Below, piece by piece: positions 1-51,136 of a stretch of 64,000 bases of DNA (position 1 is its first letter; the number at the start of each line of letters is the position of its first letter). The stretch covers positions 147,169 to 211,168 of the IMG/VR virus record IMGVR_UViG_3300042892_005961, one strand, 5' to 3'. The notes beneath the pieces were generated by a model, which searched no databases, was not told the origin of the DNA, and saw nothing but the letters and a program-made list of their open reading frames with translations. Made by a program: the position numbers and the translations under genes.

Positions 1-1018
1 CACAAGCATTTACACCCGATGGTGTACAATGACTAATATAATCATCATATTTAAAAAATCTTTCAGGATCATTTGTAACATCTCCAAGTTCAGAATAATG
101 TATAATTGCAATACACCTTTGTTCTGACGGTAAAACTTCAACTAATTCATCGAATGAATTTTTAAATGTAGTTCCTGTTATAGTTGTTCCTACAAAATTT
201 GTAAATGTTTGTCCTGATTTTGTATATCCTAATAATTGTTTTGTTGAAACATATTGATTACTATTATAACCACTTAAACTTTCATCTAAATCATTTGTTG
301 GGTAATCTGCCCCGATTGGTTTGTCCGACCATACTGTATTTAATCTCCATGAATTAAGTTGTTGTGTATAATCAATTGGGTTAAATATGTCAGTTGTTGG
401 TGATTCGTCGAAATATTCATTTAATACTACTTGTACATTACCTGTTAGTCCTGTTAAATTAGGGAGTTTACGATCTAGTGTTAATGTATTATCTGTTTTT
501 GATACTACCTTATAGATCATACTATTTGTTTGTCCCGTAATTGTTGTACTTGAAAAACCATCTAAAACTACTGTTATAAAATCATTTGGTTTAAAATTCG
601 TACCATCCACCACAACGAGACTTGTTGTTCCACTTAGTTTACTATATGTTAATGGTTGTGGTGTTGTTTTTACTGTTGGTGCGGTTGAATACATAGATAC
701 AAATCCAGCACTACCCATTTCATTTCTTAAAGTTGTAGTTGAACTATTACTAATTGGTGTTCCGTATGTTGTTGAAGTTAAGACATCGCTACCTAAAGAA
801 TATGGATATTTTACCCCTGATTCGTTATCAAATGGGGAAAATACTTTTTGTTGTCCTGTTGTTCCTGTTAAACCACTAAAAATTGTATTATAATCATATT
901 CAGAATCTCCAATTTGAAAGAATTCAATATTGAAACTACCTTTGGCAATTGCCTTTCTACCCTCATTTGTTATTCGGGCTGTTAAATATTCTGCGTGATT
1001 ACTGTTTAAAAAACTCAT
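1..1018 (-). CDS. Probable virion structural protein, partial (runs off window start)
   Basis: Not in ORF track. ATG at 1018; my translation MSFLNSNHAEYLTARITNEGRKAIAKGSFNIEFFQIGDSEYDY... stays open to the window edge. TATTTATA lies 4 nt upstream. Confidence 0.8.
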   Translation of the reverse strand, partial: MSFLNSNHAEYLTARITNEGRKAIAKGSFNIEFFQIGDSEYDYNTIFSGLTGTTGQQKVFSPFDNESGVKYPYSLGSDVLTSTTYGTPISNSSTTTLRNEMGSAGFVSMYSTAPTVKTTPQPLTYSKLSGTTSLVVVDGTNFKPNDFITVVLDGFSSTTITGQTNSMIYKVVSKTDNTLTLDRKLPNLTGLTGNVQVVLNEYFDESPTTDIFNPIDYTQQLNSWRLNTVWSDKPIGADYPTNDLDESLSGYNSNQYVSTKQLLGYTKSGQTFTNFVGTTITGTTFKNSFDELVEVLPSEQRCIAIIHYSELGDVTNDPERFFKYDDYISHCTPSGVNAC

Positions 1019-1022
1019 ATGT

Positions 1023-1030
1023 TATAAATA
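1023..1030 (-). promoter_or_regulatory. TATTTATA upstream motif (candidate late promoter or leader element)
   Basis: Reads TATTTATA on the coding strand 4 nt before ATG 1018; the motif recurs before many structural genes. Confidence 0.6.
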
Positions 1031-1043
1031 TCTTTATTTTATT

Positions 1044-20778: not shown

Positions 20779-20808
20779 ATTCAATAAATATAGATAAACC
20801 TAAAATGG

Positions 20809-20982
20809 TTATGTATCCTCTTTTATTTTTGAGTTCCCTTTTATAATATGTGGGGGGTCATAAGGACAATTTGCGCATCCATTGGAACAACAATGTCCTC
20901 TCTTCTGTAAAAAAAGAGAAGTCAGAACCATAAGCCCCGACTTCTCATCTATGTAATAATCTACTCCTTCCTCTAATTTCAT
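20809..20982 (-). CDS. DUF5522-like small Cys-rich protein
   Basis: Not in ORF track. My translation MKLEEGVDYYIDEKSGLMVLTSLFLQKRGHCCSNGCANCPYDPPHIIKGNSKIKEDT (57 aa); ATG overlaps the RNR stop (TAATG). KRGxCCxxGCxxCPY matches my recollection of DUF5522. Confidence 0.75.
   Translation of the reverse strand: MKLEEGVDYYIDEKSGLMVLTSLFLQKRGHCCSNGCANCPYDPPHIIKGNSKIKEDT
20909..20946 (-). terminator. Terminator-like hairpin inside the DUF5522-like ORF
   Basis: GAGAAGTCGG-11 nt-CTGACTTCTC followed by T7. Confidence 0.55.
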
Positions 20983-28051: not shown

Positions 28052-28097
28052 AGAATTAAAATTTAAATTATAAAATCATTTATGTTATAATATACAT

Positions 28098-28126
28098 AAA
28101 AAAACCCAGACTATAAAATCTGGGTT
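28098..28126 (-). terminator. Intrinsic terminator
   Basis: AACCCAGA-8 nt-TCTGGGTT followed by a T tract. Confidence 0.8.
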
Positions 28127-28151
28127 GAATTATTTTTAAAGTATTTTTTTG

Positions 28152-28379
28152 TTACCAACTAATCACATAATCGTTATTGGTACCCATGAAATTGTTCTTA
28201 GTCTGAATTTTATAACCATAATTTCTTAATGTGGTTACTATTGCGTCATTCACGTATCTTGGGTCTAAAGTAATTTGATATTGTCCTTGAGCTGTTGCTC
28301 CTGATATTAAACCATCGATATATGTTAATGAACCTGTTGCTGTATTTGAAGCTGTTCTTGCTGCTGATCCTGATTGCAT
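28152..28379 (-). CDS. Hypothetical protein
   Basis: 75 aa; co-oriented, followed by a terminator. Confidence 0.6.
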   Translation of the reverse strand: MQSGSAARTASNTATGSLTYIDGLISGATAQGQYQITLDPRYVNDAIVTTLRNYGYKIQTKNNFMGTNNDYVISW

Positions 28380-28400
28380 CTTAAATATTTTTTTTTATTT

Positions 28401-42502: not shown

Positions 42503-42646
42503 CTATTGAGTATTATTTTCCAACTCAATTATGTAATTTACATAATATCTACGTAAGTGAACCGGCATTGTTAATAAATCGCCGTAAGAAAACCCTTTTT
42601 TAATTAAAAATAAAATTTCGTCTAACTGTCCTTTCTTATATTCCAT
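42503..42646 (-). CDS. Small tail-assembly chaperone partner (G-T / gp51-like), possibly frameshift-expressed
   Basis: Not in ORF track. MEYKKGQLDEILFLIKKGFSYGDLLTMPVHLRRYYVNYIIELENNTQ (47 aa), in the +1 frame relative to 42636..43385. Confidence 0.75.
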   Translation of the reverse strand: MEYKKGQLDEILFLIKKGFSYGDLLTMPVHLRRYYVNYIIELENNTQ

Positions 42647-43385
42647 AGAAAGGGCGAAAAAACTCTACCCCAAATCCAATTCTAACTTGGACATCTTCTC
42701 CTGATGGGGTTCTTACTGTTTGGGTTAAATCTAACCCGGGTTTATTATCTTTTACAAATTTCCTAAAATCTTGTGAATCTTTAATTGGCATGGTTTCAAT
42801 AAAACCTCTAATTTTTAACGCATCTCTCACTCCACCAACAGATTTAATCATCATCTCAAGTTGTTTGGTTATAACAGGTGCAACACCATTACCATTCCAA
42901 CTCTCTTTAATTTTTTCAATTTCATCTTCTTGTTTTTGTGTTAAAAACTTGAACGTGATTTCTGTTTTACTTTTTTCTAAATAATGACCGTATTCTCCGT
43001 TTGTATCTTCTACTAAATTAAAATCTTTTATTTTTAATGAACCTAAATCTACCTCAACGGTAAATTCATTTCCAGTTTTATCGTCAGTAATTGTTAAATT
43101 ATAATCAGAACCAAATGCCGTATTTCTTAAAAATATTAAAATTGCTTGTCTATCTTCCTCAACAATTTCTTCTATGTTTAAATCTTTATCTAAAATTTTT
43201 CTTTTTAAAAGTTCAGTAATAACGGTATTTGTATTTAAAAAACTTGGGGATGATAAAATGTTCTCATCTGAAGCCGTTAAATAAGCCACTCTTACCGATT
43301 TTTTCTTATTCGTATAATGAATACCTTTACTTGGTAATTCTATTACATCATAGGCGATCGCCGGGTCAATTCTAGTTTCTTCCAT
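42636..43385 (-). CDS. Tail assembly chaperone / baseplate hub assembly protein (gp26-like)
   Basis: 249 aa; IELPSKG, YLTASDENIL, ILIFLRNTAFG; ends FFRPFYGI; lies between tube and tape measure. Confidence 0.75.
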   Translation of the reverse strand: MEETRIDPAIAYDVIELPSKGIHYTNKKKSVRVAYLTASDENILSSPSFLNTNTVITELLKRKILDKDLNIEEIVEEDRQAILIFLRNTAFGSDYNLTITDDKTGNEFTVEVDLGSLKIKDFNLVEDTNGEYGHYLEKSKTEITFKFLTQKQEDEIEKIKESWNGNGVAPVITKQLEMMIKSVGGVRDALKIRGFIETMPIKDSQDFRKFVKDNKPGLDLTQTVRTPSGEDVQVRIGFGVEFFRPFYGI

Positions 43386-43430
43386 AATACTATAATTTAC
43401 TTAATAACTACTTCAAAGTAAAGTTTTTAA

Positions 43431-43467
43431 AAAAGAAAAACCGATAATCTTTTGAACTATCGGTTTT
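43431..43467 (-). terminator. Intrinsic terminator after tail tube gene
   Basis: AAAACCGATA-11 nt-TATCGGTTTT then TCTTTTTT. Confidence 0.8.
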
Positions 43468-43488
43468 CGTATATGAAAATCTGTAATA

Positions 43489-43977
43489 TTAGTATATTAA
43501 AATACATCTATCCATTCTCAAAGAACATGTAATATTAGCTAATTCATCTCTGTTATAGTCTAATTCACCAAAGTTCAAGTCAGTTAAAAAACAGTTTTCT
43601 AATAACCATTTTTCAACTACTACTCCTGTTGGGTCTAACATCTCCAATTCAATATCCTTTTTATAACCTGCAGCATAACCCATACGACCTGTTACAGATT
43701 CAGCATGTAAACGGAACCATTCCATTAAAGCTTGAGAAGCTGAAGGTCCAATTGGATCTCTAAAAGTCATTTTAATTTCATTCCACTCAAATCTACCTGC
43801 AACATATGTTGATGTGTTCAGGAAAGGAATTGCAACTGAATTGATTTTAGCACTTGGTCTTGACGCGGCAGATACATACCATTCGTTTATACCCAAAGAT
43901 GAGTTGAATCTTACGATAAATCGGTTGACCCTTTTCGGTTCGTAAGGTGTCGGCATTTTCATTAATAAATCGGCCAT
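43489..43977 (-). CDS. Tail tube protein (T4 gp19-like)
   Basis: 162 aa; EPKRVNRF, FRDPI, YKKDIELEMLDPTG, W.L.NCF..D.NFG.LDY. Confidence 0.9.
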   Translation of the reverse strand: MADLLMKMPTPYEPKRVNRFIVRFNSSLGINEWYVSAASRPSAKINSVAIPFLNTSTYVAGRFEWNEIKMTFRDPIGPSASQALMEWFRLHAESVTGRMGYAAGYKKDIELEMLDPTGVVVEKWLLENCFLTDLNFGELDYNRDELANITCSLRMDRCILIY

Positions 43978-44057
43978 ATTGTGTGTTTGTTAAGTTTTGT
44001 TAGTTATTTACTTTCTAATAAATATATCCAAAAGGAAAATAATTTTATTTTGAATTA

Positions 44058-44085
44058 ATTATCTCAAAAAGGTTGTTTATGTCAA
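44058..44085 (-). promoter_or_regulatory. Sigma70-like promoter upstream of tail tube
   Basis: TTGACA-N16-GATAAT on the minus strand; the TATTTATT motif also occurs at 44017..44024. Confidence 0.35.
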
Positions 44086-44114
44086 TTATTTTTCGTAGTT
44101 TTTTACAGGCCCCA

Positions 44115-44190
44115 GTATCTAGTTCCAGTTTAATACTCTACTTTAATAAATAATATATCATTAATAAATACTAGTGTATCTAGTTCCAGT
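44115..44190. repeat. 15-bp direct repeat GTATCTAGTTCCAGT x2 (44115..44129, 44176..44190)
   Basis: Exact copies 61 bp apart in an AT-rich intergenic region. Confidence 0.9.
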
Positions 44191-44228
44191 ATTCTGGGTA
44201 AAGTATAATTATTTTTTTGTTATACATA

Positions 44229-44244
44229 TGTTCCACGTGGAGCA
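44229..44244. promoter_or_regulatory. parS-like palindrome TGTTCCACGTGGAGCA
   Basis: 15/16 match to the palindromic parS variant TGTTCCACGTGGAACA; intergenic. Confidence 0.6.
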
Positions 44245-44246
44245 TT

Positions 44247-44274
44247 AAAAAAGGGCACCATTTCTGATACCCTT
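44247..44274 (-). terminator. Intrinsic terminator after sheath gene
   Basis: AAGGGTATCA-GAAA-TGGTGCCCTT (two G-U pairs, GNRA loop) then TTTT. Confidence 0.85.
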
Positions 44275-44298
44275 CTTATTTTTATATCTCCTTTTAGA

Positions 44299-47283
44299 TT
44301 AGATATTTTCAAATGAAGCTCCTGTTGGTGTAATAATGAATTCCACATCGATATATTCAAGAGAACGAGTTGGTTTAATGTAAATCTTACCTCTCATTGT
44401 GTTTGCGTCGATATCCTCAGGATCGTTAGAAACTGTTACACGGAAGTCATACAAACCTCTTTCTTTCTTAATTGCGTCCAAGATAGGGTTTACCAATCTT
44501 AAGAATTCATTTCTTACTTGGTCATCGTTTTGTTCAAACAATAATCTTACAGAAACTGCAGAAATTAACTTTCTTGCTCTTAATAACAATCTTCTTACGT
44601 TGATTCTATCTAAAGCGGATTCTCTAACTTGTAACGTTTTGTTACCCCAAATAATAGTACCTGTATCAGAGAATGTAGCGATTGGGTTAATTCTGTTCTT
44701 ATATAATACGTCTCTATCATCTAAAGTCAATTTTTTAGTTGCTTTGATCGCATTTACTAAACCTCTACTATAACCCGCAACCGCGAACCAAGGATAAGAC
44801 ACGTTGTCAGTTAAGGCAATGTTCTTTACAACCTCACCTGTTGGTGGGATATATAATTGAGTTGCATTATCTGTATCTCTTACTTGAATCCAAGGCCAAT
44901 ATGTTGCAGAATAGTTAGAATCTATACCCGCGTCATCTAAAGCAGATACAATAGAATCTGTTGCAGTTGCCCCTGTGATATTTGGTGAGTTCATAATATA
45001 TAATGAATCAGCTCTTTCAGTTTCAATCATATCAATCGCTTGATTAACTAATGAACTATGATCTTGGAAGTTAATACCAGGTGTTGCAAATACGTTAATA
45101 TCTACAGCTTCAGGATTTGAATACGTCTCAATACCTTGTAAGTAAGCGTAATAGTCAGAATTACCTACTGAATCACTAAACACTCCTCCGGGGGTTGTAT
45201 GTCCTAACTTATAGATAGATTTACCAAAAATATAACGATCGTCGTTAGTTCTTATTGATCTATATATATCCCAACCATCCCTACCTCCATAAACTGCAAA
45301 AGTGAATTTACGGAAATTAATATTAGTTAATTTATTATTACCATTATTATTAAGCTCATCTTGACCTTCTAAATCATATGGTGTTGTTTGGAAAGTTGTT
45401 GTTCCAGTAATTGTGGAGGCGTTTACAGACAAATGGAAACCAAATGTTTCTGTTGTTGCCATCTCACCTTTATATTTTAATAAATCTCTATCGAATCCAA
45501 CAGCGTCAGATAAACCTAACATAACTTTTCTTACCTTATCTCCACCTTCAATATTAGGTGAACCATTCACATCGTAAGTTTCAACATCACCCGCATCGTT
45601 ATATTTTGTTTTGAATATTACATTACCTAATCCCATATTAATTCCTGATACAGTACCAAAGTTTTTGTTGTTTGCAAAACCTCTAAAACCAGCAGGAATA
45701 GCATCTACAGGTGCTCCGTCCGCCATAACCAACATAATTCTTTTAGAAACTAACGCGTATTCACCATCAGATGTACCGATTTTCTTACCTATATAACCTG
45801 GAGTATCTGGATTCATAGAACATCTTGAATATTTTTCAAGAGCTACTTGATTCTCATCAGTATCGTTAAAATCACGAACCACTAAATCAAACTCCATAGT
45901 TTCTAAATTAATATTTTGAATATTGATTTTTACTTCAAAGTTAGCAGCCTCTCCGTCGGAGATTGTAATAACTTGAAATAAATCAGCAACATTACCACCA
46001 CGAACTTCAGAAACAACCATCGGTGAAATTGTTGTATCCCATGGTTTTAAGTAATTATATGAATTAGAATCTTCTTCTGATTCATATGAAACGTCCATAG
46101 AAATACCTCTTACTAATCCTCTTTCAAAGGCGGTTCCTAAATAATTAGGATATGATTCATGTACATATACCGGATAGTCACCTTTATCTTTATCAAATAC
46201 ATCAGTTCCTAAAACTTTAGAAATATATTTTGATGATGATCGATTTAATGAACAAACAAATTGTTTAACTCCACTTGTCGTACCTGTTACGTTGATTGAA
46301 AACTCACCCATTGGGTTTGTATTCATATCAGATCCCGTAACACCTGATAATATGAATTTATTATCATCCTTAACTTCATGTATTAATGTTTGTCCGCTAT
46401 ATATACCTCTTGATCTTATTGCTGCAACCACTACATTATGGTATTCATCGGCTAAAAGTGCTTCCCAATCAAATTGAGTAATTGACCATTTGTTAGTTGA
46501 ATTTGTAAATGTGAATAAATAAGAATAAATACCATTTACACCGTCACCGTCTGGAGGAGTGACCAAACCATCAGATTGGTGATGCATTGTATTCCACCAT
46601 TCTTTTGTATTATTACTATTACTATATTTTTCTCCAGATAATGGAGATACTAATTCTGTACCATTTCCAACAATTGCACTATCTTCTGTTCCTTCCGTAT
46701 TTCTTCCTATCCAAAAATATTCATTAGTTGATCCGGTAGTTGAACCTTCATAATCACCGTAATTATCTTTTAAATATGTTACAATATCAGTACCATCAAC
46801 AGATGTTACACCTGACAAATGAGCAATAATTTCATTTAATGAATTTATTGAAGATCCGGTTTCTGTTGTTGTAATTCCTGTTGTTGTAATTGTTACACTA
46901 CCAACTTCATTAGTTACGCCAGAATACCCTTCTAAAATTACACCACCTACGGTTTTAATACCGAATGTTTTATATGGTCTATAACCTGTAAGACCCAATA
47001 CTCTCGTTACGAATAATTGATTAGATTCTTGTAAATATGATTTTGCAACATATCCTAATTCATATTTTGGATTACCGTCACTGAACTTTTCAGGTGAAGT
47101 AGATCCAAAATACAATTTGAATTCGTCAAAATTTGAAATTAAAATAGGTTCGAAAGCTGGACCTTTTAAAGTCTCACCAGCTAAACCTAATGTTGTAACA
47201 CCTACACTCTGTGCTACAAATGTTAAATCGAGCTCGGATGTATAGACACCTGGAGACACGAAAACTCTGTTATTACTTGCCAT
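44299..47283 (-). CDS. Tail sheath protein
   Basis: 994 aa; FVSPGVYTSELD N-terminus; YWPWIQ, PWFAVAGYSRG, LYKNRINPIA, WGNKTLQ, LDRINVRRLL, IKPTRSLEYI. Confidence 0.95.
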   Translation of the reverse strand: MASNNRVFVSPGVYTSELDLTFVAQSVGVTTLGLAGETLKGPAFEPILISNFDEFKLYFGSTSPEKFSDGNPKYELGYVAKSYLQESNQLFVTRVLGLTGYRPYKTFGIKTVGGVILEGYSGVTNEVGSVTITTTGITTTETGSSINSLNEIIAHLSGVTSVDGTDIVTYLKDNYGDYEGSTTGSTNEYFWIGRNTEGTEDSAIVGNGTELVSPLSGEKYSNSNNTKEWWNTMHHQSDGLVTPPDGDGVNGIYSYLFTFTNSTNKWSITQFDWEALLADEYHNVVVAAIRSRGIYSGQTLIHEVKDDNKFILSGVTGSDMNTNPMGEFSINVTGTTSGVKQFVCSLNRSSSKYISKVLGTDVFDKDKGDYPVYVHESYPNYLGTAFERGLVRGISMDVSYESEEDSNSYNYLKPWDTTISPMVVSEVRGGNVADLFQVITISDGEAANFEVKINIQNINLETMEFDLVVRDFNDTDENQVALEKYSRCSMNPDTPGYIGKKIGTSDGEYALVSKRIMLVMADGAPVDAIPAGFRGFANNKNFGTVSGINMGLGNVIFKTKYNDAGDVETYDVNGSPNIEGGDKVRKVMLGLSDAVGFDRDLLKYKGEMATTETFGFHLSVNASTITGTTTFQTTPYDLEGQDELNNNGNNKLTNINFRKFTFAVYGGRDGWDIYRSIRTNDDRYIFGKSIYKLGHTTPGGVFSDSVGNSDYYAYLQGIETYSNPEAVDINVFATPGINFQDHSSLVNQAIDMIETERADSLYIMNSPNITGATATDSIVSALDDAGIDSNYSATYWPWIQVRDTDNATQLYIPPTGEVVKNIALTDNVSYPWFAVAGYSRGLVNAIKATKKLTLDDRDVLYKNRINPIATFSDTGTIIWGNKTLQVRESALDRINVRRLLLRARKLISAVSVRLLFEQNDDQVRNEFLRLVNPILDAIKKERGLYDFRVTVSNDPEDIDANTMRGKIYIKPTRSLEYIDVEFIITPTGASFENI

Positions 47284-47316
47284 TGATTTTTGTTTGGTTA
47301 ATTAATTTTATTACTT

Positions 47317-47395
47317 ATCTTATAAATATCTTTGTTTTTATCAAAGATTTCCCAACTTTTCTTAAAAAGATAGTTATTTATCTTTTAATATCTTT
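47317..47395. promoter_or_regulatory. Divergent promoter region with ATCTTT/AAAGAT operator-like array
   Basis: Inverted repeats ATCTTTG-7-CAAAGAT (47328..47348) and AAAAGATA-6-TATCTTTT (47365..47386); TATTTATA (minus, 47321..47328) and TATTTATC (plus, 47375..47382). Confidence 0.55.
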
Positions 47396-47398
47396 TAT

Positions 47399-47557
47399 AT
47401 GGAAAACACTCAAAAAAACGTTAAAATAAGTGGGAAACACCACGAAATGTTAAAAAATTACTGTGATAAAAATGGTTTAAAAATCTATAAAGTTTTAGAA
47501 AAACACATAGAAGAACTTTGTAAACCTAAAAAGAAGGACATATACGGGGATGATTAA
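47399..47557 (+). CDS. Ribbon-helix-helix-like DNA-binding protein
   Basis: Not in ORF track. MENTQKNVKISGKHHEMLKNYCDKNGLKIYKVLEKHIEELCKPKKKDIYGDD (52 aa): alternating strand KNVKIS, helix, G turn, helix. Confidence 0.7.
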   Translation: MENTQKNVKISGKHHEMLKNYCDKNGLKIYKVLEKHIEELCKPKKKDIYGDD

Positions 47558-48816
47558 TAAAGATAAACAAAATCTAAAGTGGCACCGAATACAGGAGCAC
47601 TTGTTAGTGTTATTTGTTTTTGTCCTGTTATTTCATATCCCTCATCACTAAATTCAATAAGTCCATTTGTGGTAACACTAATAACACTATTAATCTTTTC
47701 TTGTAGATCAAAAACTAAGTTGACTCCATTGAAATTAAAACTTTCACGACCAACCTGTAATTCATTACCGTTTTGGTCATACATTTTGTTATTTCTACCT
47801 TTATAGTAACTTACAACAATTACATCACCTTGTAATGGGGTTCCGCTAAAATTTATGTTTGATAATCCCCCAAAATGAGAATGTGAATAATGTACGTCTT
47901 TTTCCTGTACAATTCCATTAATTGATACGTTAAATAAAACTGTTATATTCTCACCTACACTATATATTGTACTAGTACCATTTGATATTAATGTGGCTAA
48001 CGTTATATCAATTGTTTTAGATATATATTTTTTAGTTAAACTACCTCCACCTTTCATCGATTCATTTACGATAAAAGCTCGACTAATAGCTGGTTTAACC
48101 TCGAATTCATCACTATCAATTAAAAACCCTAACATAGTACATTTATATGTTTGCATATAAAATCTACGACCATCAATTGTTTCCATAGGTGTATTGTCTT
48201 CTATTGTGTCTAAAACAATTGGAATATAATGACCTTTAACTTGAGTGTAATCTTGTCTAGATGAAAAATTTTGTAAAACTAATTTATTAAATTTATTTAA
48301 ATCTCTAAACTTATTACAAACAATAGTAATATCATATGTAATATCACATGGAATCGGTTGTGGTATTTTATAAATGTCCGCTCCCATAGAATTACCATTC
48401 CAAGTTGGAACTGTTGCATAATGAAACTGATGTCTATCAGGAATAGTTCTTTGTATTGACGGGTTTGTACCAAACTGTACGTCAGGTTTTCTAATGATTG
48501 TAATAAATGGTAATTTTACATTACCGTCAGAATCTGAAAATTCCCAATTGTTTGAAAATTCACCCCATCTTTGAATTGTTAATATTTTATCAATAACAGG
48601 TATTTGTACACCATCAGAAACAACTTTAAATGTATTTTTTACATAATCCAACATACCCCTATCCAAATCATCATGTAAAATAGAGTCAGGTAAAAAAGAA
48701 TCGGATTTTGTAATCATATCCAATAACTCCTCTCTTCTTTTTAATATACCTTCACCTTGGTAAGTATCCTTACCACCGTAAACGTTGATCATGTTTTTTC
48801 TTTTAGGTATTCCCAT
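47554..48816 (-). CDS. Tail completion/terminator protein (gp15-like) with two C-terminal small beta domains
   Basis: Start moved from TTG 48855 to ATG 48816, right after the upstream stop. LPFITIIR, PIPCDITYDITI; C-terminal repeated SV..NG...I.F..P..G..Y units. Confidence 0.65.
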   Translation of the reverse strand: MGIPKRKNMINVYGGKDTYQGEGILKRREELLDMITKSDSFLPDSILHDDLDRGMLDYVKNTFKVVSDGVQIPVIDKILTIQRWGEFSNNWEFSDSDGNVKLPFITIIRKPDVQFGTNPSIQRTIPDRHQFHYATVPTWNGNSMGADIYKIPQPIPCDITYDITIVCNKFRDLNKFNKLVLQNFSSRQDYTQVKGHYIPIVLDTIEDNTPMETIDGRRFYMQTYKCTMLGFLIDSDEFEVKPAISRAFIVNESMKGGGSLTKKYISKTIDITLATLISNGTSTIYSVGENITVLFNVSINGIVQEKDVHYSHSHFGGLSNINFSGTPLQGDVIVVSYYKGRNNKMYDQNGNELQVGRESFNFNGVNLVFDLQEKINSVISVTTNGLIEFSDEGYEITGQKQITLTSAPVFGATLDFVYLY

Positions 48817-48817
48817 A

Positions 48818-49330
48818 TTAAACTCCTCTAAATTCACCTTCTTGTGTTGGAGCACAAACTATACTTCTATAGTGTGGTTTGTACCCAAACATTTTATGTT
48901 TATTATCCGATGTAATTCTACCGTCATTTGTAACGGTATAATATCTTAATCTTTCTTCTGAATCCGCATAACCAATATAATCACCATATCTAATATCAAC
49001 ACCCAATTCATTAAGGTGTGTAATATAAACCGATAATATCATATTACCTGGCTCATTATATCTCATAAGACCTTTTGTGTATGATGAATTTTTTGGTTCA
49101 TCAATTTTAACCAACGCATTAAACTCAACGGGAGGAAAAAACTTAATTTCATCCATTCCCGCCTCGGCGTATACGTCGTCATTGTCGGTCTTTTGTCTAT
49201 CAACACGATATAAGACCAATTTCATATTTAAATCCCCGTGTAGATACTCCTGACCCATCTGAATGTTAATATCAAAGTCATCTTGGGAGAAGAATTTACC
49301 TAAACGAGTAATTGGTAGTTTATTGTTCAT
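48818..49330 (-). CDS. Head completion / neck protein (gp14-like)
   Basis: 170 aa; VLYRVD...DDVYAEA...PPVEF, GDYI; TATTTATT at 49336..49343. Confidence 0.65.
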   Translation of the reverse strand: MNNKLPITRLGKFFSQDDFDINIQMGQEYLHGDLNMKLVLYRVDRQKTDNDDVYAEAGMDEIKFFPPVEFNALVKIDEPKNSSYTKGLMRYNEPGNMILSVYITHLNELGVDIRYGDYIGYADSEERLRYYTVTNDGRITSDNKHKMFGYKPHYRSIVCAPTQEGEFRGV

Positions 49331-49384
49331 ATCCTAATAAATAGTTTAATCTTCCATTCTATTTAGTTATATTATATATAATAG

Positions 49385-51136
49385 ATGGAAAAGAAAATAC
49401 CTGAGGTTGAAGCAAGGGAAATATTAAATGAATATGACGGATCTAATAATGTTTTATTAGAATACAAACGTAAATTTGTGGAAGTTAAAAACTTTAAATT
49501 AACTCGTCCACAGTCGGAATACGTTATCAAATATAAAGACACCTCCCCTAAAGTTGCTCGTAAACACATCAATATCGTTTCCACATTTGGTGAGAAATTA
49601 ATGGAAGAAATGTTATTACCATTACCACCCGAAAAAGTGTGGTGTGAAAAATTGTTATGTGAATCCGATAAAGCATTTCATATTTGGGGTAAAGTAATTG
49701 ATAGTCAACAAAACCACGCAATGTGGTTACCTAAGTCTGCAATTGTTCAAGAAGAAAAAAAGTTAAATCGTGTAATTGATTATAGTCCGTATGATAATCG
49801 TCCCCCTATGGAACACCAGAAGGTCGCCATAGAGAAATTATTAGCAAACAATAAGTTTATATTAGCTGATGATATGGGTCTCGGAAAAACGACAGCAGCG
49901 GTTATTGCGTCAATGGAAAGTGGTGCGAAGAAAGTTTTAATTGTTTGTCCCGCATCCCTTAAAATAAATTGGGATAGAGAGATTAAAAATTATACAGATA
50001 GGAAAGTTTTAATTGTTGAAGGTCGTAAATGGGGGTCTACTTTTGATTACTACATTATCAATTATGATATATTAAAGAATTATCACACCACAGAAAAAAG
50101 TGAAGATAGTGATGACTATAAATTATTAGTAAATGAAAAGTTTGATTTAGCAATTGTGGATGAAGCACATTACGTTAGTAATAGTACAGCAAACAGAACT
50201 CGTTTATTAAATGACGTATTGGAAACCATACCACGAGTTTGGTTATTAACAGGAACCCCAATGACATCGAGACCAATTAACTATTTTAATTTATTAAAGA
50301 TTGTTGACTCACCTTTAACATTAAATTGGCAATCATACGTTCGTCGTTATTGTAAAGGTTATCAATTCACGGTTGGAAATAGAAAAGTGTGGAACACAAG
50401 TGGGGCAAGTAATTTAGATGAATTAAGAGAAAGAACTAAATCATATGTTCTTCGTAGAATGAAAACTGACATTTTAGATTTACCTGAAAAAATTGTTACA
50501 CCTGTATTTGTAGAATTAAGTAGTAAAATGTATGATGAGGAGTTAGAAGAGTTTACAAGAATTAGTAATGACAATAAAGATAAAGAAACATTAAGTGTAA
50601 CATTAAATCGTTTAATGAAAATTAGACAACTTATTGCTTACGAAAAAATTCCATATACTTGCGAGATTATAGATAAATGTTTAGACCAAGGAAAAAAAGT
50701 AATCGTATTCACCAACTTTACAATGTCATTGGATATGTTACATGAAAAATACAAAAAGAACTCTGTAATATTAAATGGTAGTATGTCTAAAGAAAAGAAA
50801 CAAGAGAGTGTTGATAGATTTCAAAATGAAGATAAAATAAAAATATTTATTTCTAATATCATTGCTGGTGGTGTCGGTATTACATTAACTGCGGGTGAGG
50901 TTGTTGTAATGAATGATTTATCATTTGTACCTGCTCATCATAGTCAAGCGGAAGATAGAGCATATCGTTACGGACAACAGAATAGTGTATTAGTTTATTA
51001 TCCCGTGTTTGAAAATACGGTTGAAAAAATAATATACAATATATTACAAAAGAAAAAGAACGTCATTGACCAAGTTATGGGTGACGGAGAATATTCCGAA
51101 TCGTTCAGTAAAGACCTACTTAAAAGTCTCTTTTAA
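49385..51136 (+). CDS. SNF2/HARP-family helicase
   Basis: 583 aa; ADDMGLGKT, IVCPASL, IVDEAH, LTGTP, QAEDRAYRYGQ. Confidence 0.9.
   Translation: MEKKIPEVEAREILNEYDGSNNVLLEYKRKFVEVKNFKLTRPQSEYVIKYKDTSPKVARKHINIVSTFGEKLMEEMLLPLPPEKVWCEKLLCESDKAFHIWGKVIDSQQNHAMWLPKSAIVQEEKKLNRVIDYSPYDNRPPMEHQKVAIEKLLANNKFILADDMGLGKTTAAVIASMESGAKKVLIVCPASLKINWDREIKNYTDRKVLIVEGRKWGSTFDYYIINYDILKNYHTTEKSEDSDDYKLLVNEKFDLAIVDEAHYVSNSTANRTRLLNDVLETIPRVWLLTGTPMTSRPINYFNLLKIVDSPLTLNWQSYVRRYCKGYQFTVGNRKVWNTSGASNLDELRERTKSYVLRRMKTDILDLPEKIVTPVFVELSSKMYDEELEEFTRISNDNKDKETLSVTLNRLMKIRQLIAYEKIPYTCEIIDKCLDQGKKVIVFTNFTMSLDMLHEKYKKNSVILNGSMSKEKKQESVDRFQNEDKIKIFISNIIAGGVGITLTAGEVVVMNDLSFVPAHHSQAEDRAYRYGQQNSVLVYYPVFENTVEKIIYNILQKKKNVIDQVMGDGEYSESFSKDLLKSLF

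What the first reader, a model, noticed from the sequence alone, without database searches (positions are those of the whole stretch)
47284..47557. Hidden RHH regulator with operator array, divergent from the tail sheath gene
Seen: an unannotated 52-aa RHH-like ORF on the plus strand. The 115-bp divergent gap has five ATCTTT/AAAGAT half-sites (47328, 47343, 47366, 47380, 47390) plus ATCTT at 47317. They form two inverted repeats that abut or overlap both TATTTAT motifs. Known: Arc/CopG/ParG-type RHH proteins bind arrays of short repeats at their own promoters, and some are centromere-binding proteins. Inference: an autoregulatory switch that also gates sheath transcription, or a partner for the parS/repeat locus on the other side of the sheath gene.
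Basis: partly seen in the sequence, partly recalled or inferred. Interest (0 to 1): 0.6.

Follow-up and report, generated by a model that had tools for sequence, protein, structure and literature searches.

The report
Small phage repressor beside sheath gene
A real, strongly conserved 52-residue DNA-binding protein of the ribbon-helix-helix type lies back-to-back with the tail sheath gene of an uncultured freshwater T4-like jumbo phage, and the short gap between them holds a conserved array of its likely binding sites over both promoter-like boxes. It is an ordinary kind of switch in an unusual place, and binding is still untested.

Summary
ORF 47399..47557(+) is a genuine gene. It is intact in every related locus that could be read (213). 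dN/dS is about 0.045. It is much better conserved (73-100% identity) than the neighbouring 433-aa gene (about 60%). All 37 aligned family members give weak but convergent matches to ribbon-helix-helix (RHH) families only: RepB/CopB, ParG, Omega and 56B/SvtR.

The 115-bp gap holds five ATCTTT/AAAGAT half-sites, better described as TATCTTT heptads. They form IR1 (47328-47348), IR2 (47366-47385) and a 10-bp direct repeat. The layout, spacings and arm sequences are kept in 81 distinct gaps from relatives, while loops and flanks vary. IR1 occurs only at this locus in each of three related genomes of 217-324 kb.

The sheath box (47328..47321, minus strand) overlaps IR1. The ORF52 box (47375-47381) lies inside IR2.

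Best reading: an autoregulatory RHH repressor that also acts on the sheath promoter, much like Arc, omega or SvtR. The parS/partition alternative is rejected: the sheath-tube gap has no heptads and near-complete relatives have no ParA. Binding and regulation are inferred, not shown. It is a new member of a known kind, of moderate interest.

The parts
47399..47557 (+). ORF52, a 52-aa ribbon-helix-helix protein. Predicted strand about residues 6-11 (KNVKIS), helix A 12-25, invariant G26 turn, helix B 29-41, and a near-invariant C-terminal tail KPKKKDIYGDD.
   Evidence: Intact in all 213 related loci that could be read. Codon-position entropy is 0.14/0.11/0.70 and dN/dS about 0.045. RHH-only family matches in 37/37 members. 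PDB profile matches to omega, SvtR and ParG. AF2 helices at 12-25 and 29-41.
47328..47348 (.). IR1: ATCTTTG-N7-CAAAGAT, a head-to-head heptad pair and putative operator over the sheath promoter-like box.
   Evidence: The arms are invariant across 81 distinct gaps while the 7-nt loop has 12 variants. The exact IR occurs only at this locus in each of three genomes of 217-324 kb.
47321..47328 (-). Promoter-like box of the sheath gene. It reads TATTTATA on the minus strand, about 38 nt upstream of the sheath ATG, and overlaps heptad H1 (47327-47333).
   Evidence: The box class is defined: all 19 intergenic copies are in sense orientation, 6-193 nt upstream of the next same-strand start (17 of them within 71 nt). 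ATAAATATC is present in 81/81 gaps. RNA-library contigs cover the sheath 5' end up to about 47301 and none cover 47310-47350 (weak evidence).
47366..47385 (.). IR2: AAAGATA-N6-TATCTTT, a tail-to-tail heptad pair around the ORF52 promoter-like box.
   Evidence: I25. Present in 69 of 81 distinct gaps, with a '<>' spacing of 13 in 58.
47375..47382 (+). Promoter-like box of ORF52 (TATTTATC), 16 nt before the ATG.
   Evidence: TATTTAT lies within 50 nt of the ORF52 ATG in 69 of 81 distinct gaps.
47379..47395 (+). Direct repeat of TATCTTT (47379-47385 and 47389-47395) at 10-bp period, covering the expected ORF52 transcription start. Relatives carry 2 or 3 copies.
   Evidence: A '>>' spacing of 10 occurs 71 times and of 11 occurs 16 times in 81 gaps.
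47316..47322 (+). Degenerate heptad TATCTTA on the downstream (transcribed) side of the sheath box. It is variable in relatives.
   Evidence: TATCTTA, TATCTAA or TATTCTA in relatives.
44299..47283 (-). Tail sheath gene (994 aa), divergent from ORF52 and the proposed second target of the switch.
   Evidence: PHROG 23 tail sheath, E = 5e-61; Pfam Phage_sheath_1 and 1C. About 34% identity to the gp18 of T4-like cyanophages and T-even-type (T4-like) phages of enterobacteria and Aeromonas.
47554..48855 (-). Convergent 433-aa gene, with a weak tail-fibre PHROG match. Its stop codon overlaps the ORF52 stop (TTAA, 47554-47557), and no terminator lies between the two genes.
   Evidence: Synteny holds in 80/80 loci.

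Best explanation
ORF52 encodes a small ribbon-helix-helix DNA-binding protein of a T4-like freshwater jumbo phage.

Inferred mechanism:
- Dimers insert their paired N-terminal strands into successive major grooves. The base-facing residues are the invariant N7 and K9.
- They bind the TATCTTT heptads in the 115-bp gap between ORF52 and the sheath gene.
- Heptads at IR2 and the 10-bp direct repeat cover the ORF52 promoter-like box and its start, giving negative autoregulation.
- Heptads at IR1 overlap the sheath promoter-like box, so the same protein also lowers or times transcription from the sheath's own promoter.

Shown here: the gene is real and under strong purifying selection; it matches RHH families; the array is conserved, locus-specific and overlaps both boxes.

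Inferred: dimerisation, binding to these heptads, the sign of the effect (repression), and that the boxes are promoters.
For: Gene reality:
- 50 distinct nucleotide versions, third-position entropy 0.70 against 0.11-0.14, dN/dS about 0.045.
- Intact and syntenic in all loci.
- 1608 protein clusters in public data.
- 87-100% identical in the 80 nearest loci; in the 80 loci fetched with the 433-aa neighbour it stays 67-100% identical while that neighbour falls to about 60%.

RHH:
- Pfam RepB-RCR_reg in 37/37 members (best 2e-5), ParG in 29, Omega_Repress in 20 (1e-4), 56B_RHH in 7. No other family recurs in more than 8 members.
- PHROG Arc-like repressors, E about 1e-3.
- PDB profile matches to omega, SvtR and ParG at E 0.16-0.37.
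- The nearest named Atlas clusters are all RHH.
- AF2 helices at 12-25 and 29-41, with invariant G26 between them.
- In the HMMER alignment to omega, N7 and K9 fall in its DNA-reading strand.

Operator:
- Cluster statistics.
- 81/81 gaps keep the array; the dominant layout is ><<>> with fixed spacings 16, 23-24, 13 and 10.
- Arms and box are invariant while loops and flanks vary.
- IR1 occurs only at this locus in each of three related genomes.

Promoter overlap: the TATTTAT box class.

Precedent:
- Omega binds 7-bp heptads in direct and inverted order over promoters (PMC9499535).
- SvtR represses its own gene and a virion tail-fibre gene (PMC5569661).
Against: - No experiment or prediction here shows binding.
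- All family matches lie below the curated cut-offs for the window's own protein (16.5 bits against 21).
- The monomer model is of low confidence (pLDDT 65) and does not form the strand.
- The recognition residues and the heptad are both invariant, so there is no co-variation to tie protein to site.
- The heptad next to the sheath box could partly be promoter context: AAAGATATTTATAA also stands before gene 2..1018, and AAGATATTTAT occurs about 6 times per genome.
- Heptad spacings of 10, 13 and 14 bp differ from omega's contiguous 7-bp register.
- If both promoters are of one class, the circuit's purpose (a cap, a pulse or a delay) is unclear.
Confidence: 0.6

Rival explanations
1. ORF52 is an RHH protein that binds the array but acts as an activator or architectural factor for the sheath promoter, or switches from activation to repression with concentration as AvtR does. 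It would not be a simple repressor.
For: On each gene's coding strand, an AAAGATA heptad sits immediately upstream of the box in the same orientation (12-nt mirror repeat, I9). That is a position typical of activators. AvtR, a viral RHH, both activates and represses depending on concentration (PMC5569661). The sheath is a very highly expressed gene and shows the densest coverage in RNA libraries.
Against: IR1 overlaps the box itself rather than lying upstream of it. The direct repeats cover the expected ORF52 start. Most characterised small RHH proteins repress (PMC5569661).
Confidence: 0.15
2. The heptads belong to the promoters themselves or are sites for another factor, such as extended promoter elements read by the phage's transcription machinery. 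ORF52 would then bind elsewhere or have another role.
For: AAAGATATTTATAA recurs before gene 2..1018. AAGATATTTAT occurs about 6 times per 310-324 kb genome, against 1-2 for the control word. No co-variation links protein and site.
Against: The multi-copy, two-orientation array is unique to this locus. At the 371-aa gene's promoter the box is conserved in 39/39 relatives but the heptad-like AAGA beside it is not. At the sheath promoter it is invariant in 81/81. An RHH gene directly beside a repeat array is the classic autoregulation layout.
Confidence: 0.15
3. ORF52 is a ParG/omega-type centromere-binding protein. The array, or the repeat beyond the sheath gene, is a partition site.
For: Weak profile matches to ParG and omega. 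The sites form an array of short repeats.
Against: Relatives that are 97% and 93% complete contain no AAA_31 or CbiA (ParA-type) ATPase, and the controls were positive in 14/14 genomes. The neighbouring genes are tail genes. Only about five residues precede the strand, so there is no long ATPase-stimulating tail. The sheath-tube gap holds no heptad. The phage is a T4-like virulent type.
Confidence: 0.03
4. ORF52 is the RHH antitoxin of a toxin-antitoxin pair.
For: Many RHH proteins are antitoxins. One nearby Atlas cluster carries Antitox_RHH.
Against: There is no co-directional partner gene. Downstream lies a convergent 433-aa structural gene whose stop overlaps the ORF52 stop. The protein consists of the DNA-binding domain plus an 11-residue tail.
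Confidence: 0.02

Closest known systems
Omega (ParB-pSM) repressor of plasmid pSM19035 (PDB 2bnw, 1irq; Pfam PF07764)
   Same: A small RHH protein. It binds non-palindromic 7-bp heptads (WATCACW) arranged in direct and inverted order over promoters, including its own, with one dimer per heptad and cooperative binding (PMC9499535). It is a profile match here. The heptad here, TATCTTT, shares the WATC start.
   Different: Omega heptads are contiguous, in a 7-bp register and in runs of 7-10. Here there are 5-6 heptads at 10-, 13- and 14-bp spacings. Omega has a long N-terminal tail and a ParA partner; neither is present here.
SvtR (gp08, 56B) of archaeal virus SIRV1 (PDB 2kel; Pfam PF21432)
   Same: A viral RHH of similar size that represses its own promoter and the promoter of a virion structural (tail-fibre) gene, thought to prevent premature expression (PMC5569661). 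There is a weak sequence match.
   Different: SvtR comes from an archaeal virus with a TATA/BRE promoter. Its site is a long imperfect inverted repeat about 80 nt from the promoter. It is not divergent from its structural target.
Arc and Mnt repressors of phage P22 (immI region)
   Same: Small phage RHH repressors acting at closely spaced divergent promoters, with autoregulation (own knowledge of the P22 immI literature). PHROG 'Arc-like repressor' matches at E about 1e-3.
   Different: Arc uses a single 21-bp operator bound by a tetramer and controls antirepressor, not a structural gene. P22 is temperate. Sequence similarity is marginal.
CopB/RepB regulators of plasmid replication (Pfam PF10723)
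   Same: This is the best-scoring family for all 37 members (best E = 2e-5). Some relatives carry the domain in precomputed annotation. The Atlas names the cluster 'putative CopB'.
   Different: Those proteins regulate plasmid rep genes. There is no replication gene beside ORF52. The window's own protein scores below the curated cut-off.

Membership tests
Ribbon-helix-helix superfamily (MetJ/Arc type) | Sequence-profile match to RHH families across the strand-helix-helix core | tested here: met
   37/37 family members match PF10723, 29 match ParG, 20 match Omega_Repress and 7 match 56B_RHH. Only RHH families recur. PHROG Arc-like matches and PDB matches to omega, SvtR and ParG. Caveat: the window's own protein scores 16.5 bits, under the curated cut-off of 21.
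Ribbon-helix-helix superfamily (MetJ/Arc type) | Secondary structure: a short N-terminal strand, helix A, a tight turn with a conserved Gly, then helix B, about 45 residues in all | tested here: inconclusive
   AF2 gives helices at 12-25 and 29-41 with invariant G26 between them. Residues 1-11 are unstructured in the monomer model (pLDDT below 50), as expected if the strand forms only in a dimer. Fold searches were uninformative.
Ribbon-helix-helix superfamily (MetJ/Arc type) | Obligate homodimer through an antiparallel two-stranded sheet | tested here: inconclusive
   The two-copy complex job returned 'no answer'. It is not evidence either way.
Ribbon-helix-helix superfamily (MetJ/Arc type) | Sequence-specific binding to repeated operator subsites | not testable with these tools
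   Only indirect evidence: a conserved, locus-specific heptad array lies immediately upstream.
Autoregulated RHH repressor (Arc/CopG/omega/SvtR style) | Operator repeats overlap the regulator's own promoter | tested here: met
   IR2 and the direct repeat enclose the TATTTATC box and the 16 nt before the ATG. That the box is a promoter is inferred from its orientation and position statistics.
Type Ib partition centromere-binding protein (ParG/omega) | A ParA-type Walker ATPase partner is encoded by the element | tested here: not met
   No PF13614 or PF01656 match in G002 (97% complete), G003 (93%) or the window's record. The control search was positive in 14/14 genomes.
Type Ib partition centromere-binding protein (ParG/omega) | A flexible N-terminal tail that stimulates the ATPase | tested here: not met
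   Only about 5 residues precede the predicted strand.
Type II antitoxin with RHH domain | An adjacent co-transcribed toxin gene and a toxin-binding C-terminal extension | tested here: not met
   The downstream neighbour is a convergent 433-aa tail-module gene. The C-terminal tail is only 11 residues long.

The most novel reading that the evidence does not exclude
A gene-specific repressor is built into the tail module of a large clade of virulent T4-like jumbo phages. It governs how much, or when, sheath protein is made from the sheath's own promoter. This would add a local feedback layer to late transcription, which in T4-type phages is usually regarded as globally controlled. The near-invariant C-terminal tail KPKKKDIYGDD may couple the protein to the transcription or replication machinery or mediate dimer-dimer cooperativity.
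Probability: 0.25. Interest if true: 0.6.

Novelty: new member of a known kind. Interest (0 to 1): 0.4.

Why it matters
Structural genes of T4-like phages are usually thought to be controlled as a block by the late sigma and clamp system. A dedicated small repressor would be a new, testable control point for tail assembly stoichiometry. This one is fixed in position next to the sheath gene across more than 1600 protein clusters of uncultured freshwater jumbo phages. Its operators overlap the sheath promoter-like box. The work also gives a functional label to a very widespread 'hypothetical protein' (mis-named 'coproporphyrinogen III oxidase' in some sources). It defines a promoter-like box (TATTTAT) useful for annotating these phages. 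If binding fails, it is simply one more small conserved phage ORF.

Tried and rejected
- Homodimer prediction: 'no answer', score 0.38 against a mark of 0.42. Not used as evidence either way.
- Fold searches with the low-confidence monomer model: Foldseek against the PDB gave only SvtR at E = 9.9. VIA wide gave generic helical hairpins at Z of 4.1 or less, with omega at rank 49. Both are uninformative.
- INPHARED phages: no DNA match and no meaningful tblastn match for ORF52, so there is no cultured close relative.
- Rfam on 43300-49500: nothing.
- Sigma-70 promoter scan: not above shuffles. No intrinsic terminators.
- Bacteroidota-type TAnnTTTG box: H1 fits it (TATCTTTG), but the motif is not enriched before other genes in the window. 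Dropped in favour of the TATTTAT box.
- Regulon search: tandem or inverted heptad pairs are essentially confined to this locus in three related genomes. The single heptad-like word beside the 371-aa gene's box is not conserved, so a wider regulon is not supported, though gene 2..1018 remains open.
- parS/partition idea: rejected.
- Protein-operator co-variation: sought in the most diverged relatives, but both N7/K9 and the heptad core are invariant, so the test has no power.
- Metatranscriptome contigs: they show the sheath 5' region and one contig over ORF52 in RNA libraries. Contigs cannot give strand, ends or prove transcription.
- The large representative-protein search was not run, because family scans had already placed the protein.

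Full report
**Context**

The window is part of a 75-kb IMG/VR virus record judged 24% complete. GC content is 31%. Relatives reach 211-334 kb.

Almost all genes from 2 to 49330 lie on the minus strand and form a tail module:
- The sheath gene is 44299..47283, with PHROG 23 at E = 5e-61 and Pfam Phage_sheath_1 and 1C.
- A gp19-like tube gene is 43489..43977.
- A baseplate-hub-like gene is 42636..43385.

The sheath is about 34% identical to the gp18 of T4-like cyanophages and T-even-type (T4-like) phages of enterobacteria and Aeromonas. This is therefore an uncultured freshwater T4-like jumbo phage. No close relative exists among deposited phage genomes.

**The observation**

The repeated unit is better read as the heptad TATCTTT:
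- H1 is at 47327-47333 (+).
- H2 is AATCTTT on the minus strand (47343-47349).
- H3 is at 47366-47372 (-).
- H4 is at 47379-47385 (+).
- H5 is at 47389-47395 (+).
- A degenerate copy, TATCTTA, is at 47316.

H1 and H2 form IR1 (ATCTTTG-N7-CAAAGAT). H3 and H4 form IR2 (AAAGATA-N6-TATCTTT). H4 and H5 are a 10-bp direct repeat.

Statistics:
- This is the only place in 64 kb with three or more copies of the hexamer within 70 bp.
- Five copies were reached by 0 of 300 window shuffles and 0 of 5000 shuffles of the gap itself.
- I note that 'some hexamer five times' is common in shuffles of so AT-rich a gap. The stronger argument is comparative.

**The gene is real**

Two scans of viral contigs brought in 160 loci, and a third added 58.
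- The ORF is intact in every locus in which the region could be read. It is always convergent with the 433-aa gene and divergent from the sheath gene.
- Fifty distinct nucleotide versions show a clear period-3 pattern. Entropy is 0.14, 0.11 and 0.70 bits at codon positions 1, 2 and 3.
- Mean dN is 0.05 against dS 1.12, a ratio of about 0.045.
- In the 80 loci fetched with the 433-aa neighbour, which falls to about 60% identity there, ORF52 stays 67-100% identical, 73% or more in all but one.
- A profile search finds 1608 clusters at E of 0.01 or below. They are called 'hypothetical protein', or in a few records 'coproporphyrinogen III oxidase', and some carry PF10723.

So the gene is not invisible to gene callers, but it has no functional annotation.

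**RHH assignment**

- The window's protein matches RepB-RCR_reg (E = 0.008) and Omega_Repress (E = 0.16) in Pfam, and three 'Arc-like/transcriptional repressor' PHROGs (E about 1e-3). All are below the curated cut-offs.
- Scanning all 37 aligned members singly gives RepB-RCR_reg in 37 (best 2e-5), ParG in 29, Omega_Repress in 20 (best 1e-4) and 56B_RHH in 7. No unrelated family occurs in more than 8 members.
- A profile of the alignment finds omega (2bnw, 1irq), SvtR (2kel) and ParG (1p94) in the PDB at E 0.16-0.37.
- The language-model atlas places the protein among 'putative CopB' clusters. The nearest clusters with a Pfam label are Arc, 56B_RHH, RHH_3 and Antitox_RHH.
- AF2 on the alignment gives helices at 12-25 and 29-41, with an unstructured N-terminus and pLDDT 65. 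That fits a strand which forms only in the dimer.

Invariant residues are K6, N7, K9, H15, L18, K19, C22, G26, L27, K28, Y30, K31, K35, I37, D47, Y49 and G50. In the HMMER alignment to omega, N7 and K9 fall on the alternate, outward-facing positions of omega's strand. From my own knowledge of the omega-DNA structures, those are the base-contacting positions. I did not verify this here beyond the paper titles cited in PMC9499535.

**The array is a conserved, local feature**

I extracted 81 distinct sheath-ORF52 gaps of 104-128 bp.
- All contain ATAAATATC, which is the box plus the start of H1.
- All contain 3-6 hexamer half-sites.
- 78 have IR1 (68 exactly), 69 have IR2, and 68 have a direct repeat.
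- The dominant order is ><<>> (36 gaps), with one extra copy at either end in 27 more gaps (16 and 11).
- Spacings are fixed at 16, 23-24, 13 and 10 bp.
- The columns of ATAAATATCTTTG and CAAAGATTT have zero entropy. The IR1 loop has 12 variants, and the flanks vary.
- The most diverged members (L210, L213-L216) keep the heptad but reshuffle the number and placement of copies. That is the turnover expected of a binding-site array.

In three related genomes (217, 311 and 324 kb; 65, 93 and 97% complete), ATCTTTG-N7-CAAAGAT occurs only at this locus. Tandem heptads are nearly confined to it as well. The heptad is therefore not a general promoter word.

**The promoter-like box**

Looking at all intergenic gaps, I found TATTTAT(A/T) in the sense orientation 6-71 nt before many gene starts.
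- Of 40 copies in the window, 19 lie in the 3.9% of the window that is intergenic.
- All 19 point towards the downstream gene.
- The binomial probability is about 1e-11 for location and 2e-6 for orientation.
- Before the 371-aa gene, the box is kept in 39 of 39 distinct relatives.

The box is the reverse complement of the T4 late promoter word TATAAATA (own knowledge), but it also precedes the DNA polymerase gene. I therefore call it only 'promoter-like'.

The sheath copy (47328..47321, minus strand) overlaps H1 and the left arm of IR1. The ORF52 copy (47375-47381, plus strand) lies in the IR2 spacer and H4, 16 nt before the ATG, and H5 covers the expected start.

**RNA libraries**

Contigs from four lake or freshwater metatranscriptomes cover the sheath 5' region up to 47275-47301, and none cover 47310-47350. 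One contig covers 47379-47503. This fits a sheath start shortly downstream of its box and the presence of the ORF52 region in RNA libraries. However, contigs cannot show strand or ends, and DNA carry-over is not excluded.

**Mechanism**

The best reading is a small RHH autoregulator whose operators also occupy the divergent sheath promoter.

The layout resembles several known systems:
- Omega binds heptads in direct and inverted order over promoters, one dimer per heptad (PMC9499535).
- SvtR is a viral RHH that represses its own gene and a tail-fibre gene (PMC5569661).
- Arc and Mnt act at divergent P22 promoters (own knowledge).

A 10-bp period puts successive heptads on one face of the helix, which suits cooperative dimer-dimer binding. 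This point is inferred.

Because both boxes are of one class, I favour a feedback cap or pulse on sheath-promoter output rather than an early-to-late delay. That is speculation.

**Rivals**

- Activator or dual role. A heptad lies just upstream of each box in the same relative orientation (I9). AvtR is a precedent (PMC5569661).
- Heptads as promoter context or sites for another factor. AAAGATATTTATAA also precedes gene 2..1018, and AAGATATTTAT occurs about six times per genome against 1-2 for the control. At the 371-aa gene, however, the heptad-like part is not conserved.
- Partition. Rejected: there is no ParA, no N-terminal tail, no heptads in the sheath-tube gap, and that gap's repeat is a different word.
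- Antitoxin. Rejected on gene context.

**Verdict**

This is a new member of a known kind of regulator in an unusual, strongly conserved position. No step had to be referred. The reads call used 1201 letters.

Noticed in passing
window-wide, e.g. 1030, 2367, 3028, 9027, 18453, 40592, 42502, 44024, 49343, 55825, 59057, 62837 (minus strand) and 51335 (plus strand): A promoter-like box TATTTAT(A/T) lies in sense orientation 6-71 nt before many gene starts. All 19 intergenic copies point at the downstream gene. It is conserved in 39/39 relatives before the 371-aa gene. It is the reverse complement of the T4 late promoter word TATAAATA, yet it also precedes the DNA polymerase gene. Several copies sit only 3-6 nt from the ATG, which hints at near-leaderless mRNAs.
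   Followed up: partly
window 44115-44129 and 44176-44190 (sheath-tube gap 43978-44298): A perfect 15-nt direct repeat, GTATCTAGTTCCAGT, with copies 61 bp apart. The exact 15-mer is found in 38 of 219 loci, and related words (ACTGGAACTAGATA, TATTCTAGAAC) sit at similar spacing in other relatives. It is unrelated to the TATCTTT heptad, and its function is unknown.
   Followed up: partly
window 47522-47554 (ORF52 residues 42-52): The C-terminal tail KPKKKDIYGDD is nearly invariant across the family, although it lies outside the RHH core. HMMER noted a non-significant likeness of KKDIYGD to KKDIMGD, which in omega sits just before the DNA-reading strand.
   Followed up: no
window 1024-1037 (minus strand), upstream of gene 2..1018: AAAGATATTTATAA, the same heptad-plus-box word as at the sheath promoter, stands 12 nt before this gene's ATG. 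AAGATATTTAT occurs about 6 times per 310-324 kb related genome, against 1-2 for a control word. This could be a small regulon or just a promoter subclass.
   Followed up: partly
window 47554-47557: ORF52 and the convergent 433-aa gene share overlapping stop codons (TTAA), with no terminator-like hairpin between them. Transcripts of either gene would run antisense into the other.
   Followed up: no
protein family of ORF52: Several public records name this 52-aa protein 'coproporphyrinogen III oxidase'. This probably comes from a spurious short match (PF01218, 6 of 37 members, E of 0.028 or above).
   Followed up: no
window 28052-28400 and 20785-20981: Two long gaps in the list of ORFs of 90 aa or more. 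The first contains an open minus-strand frame of roughly 75 codons that starts with ATG, so it is probably a small gene rather than a true gap.
   Followed up: no
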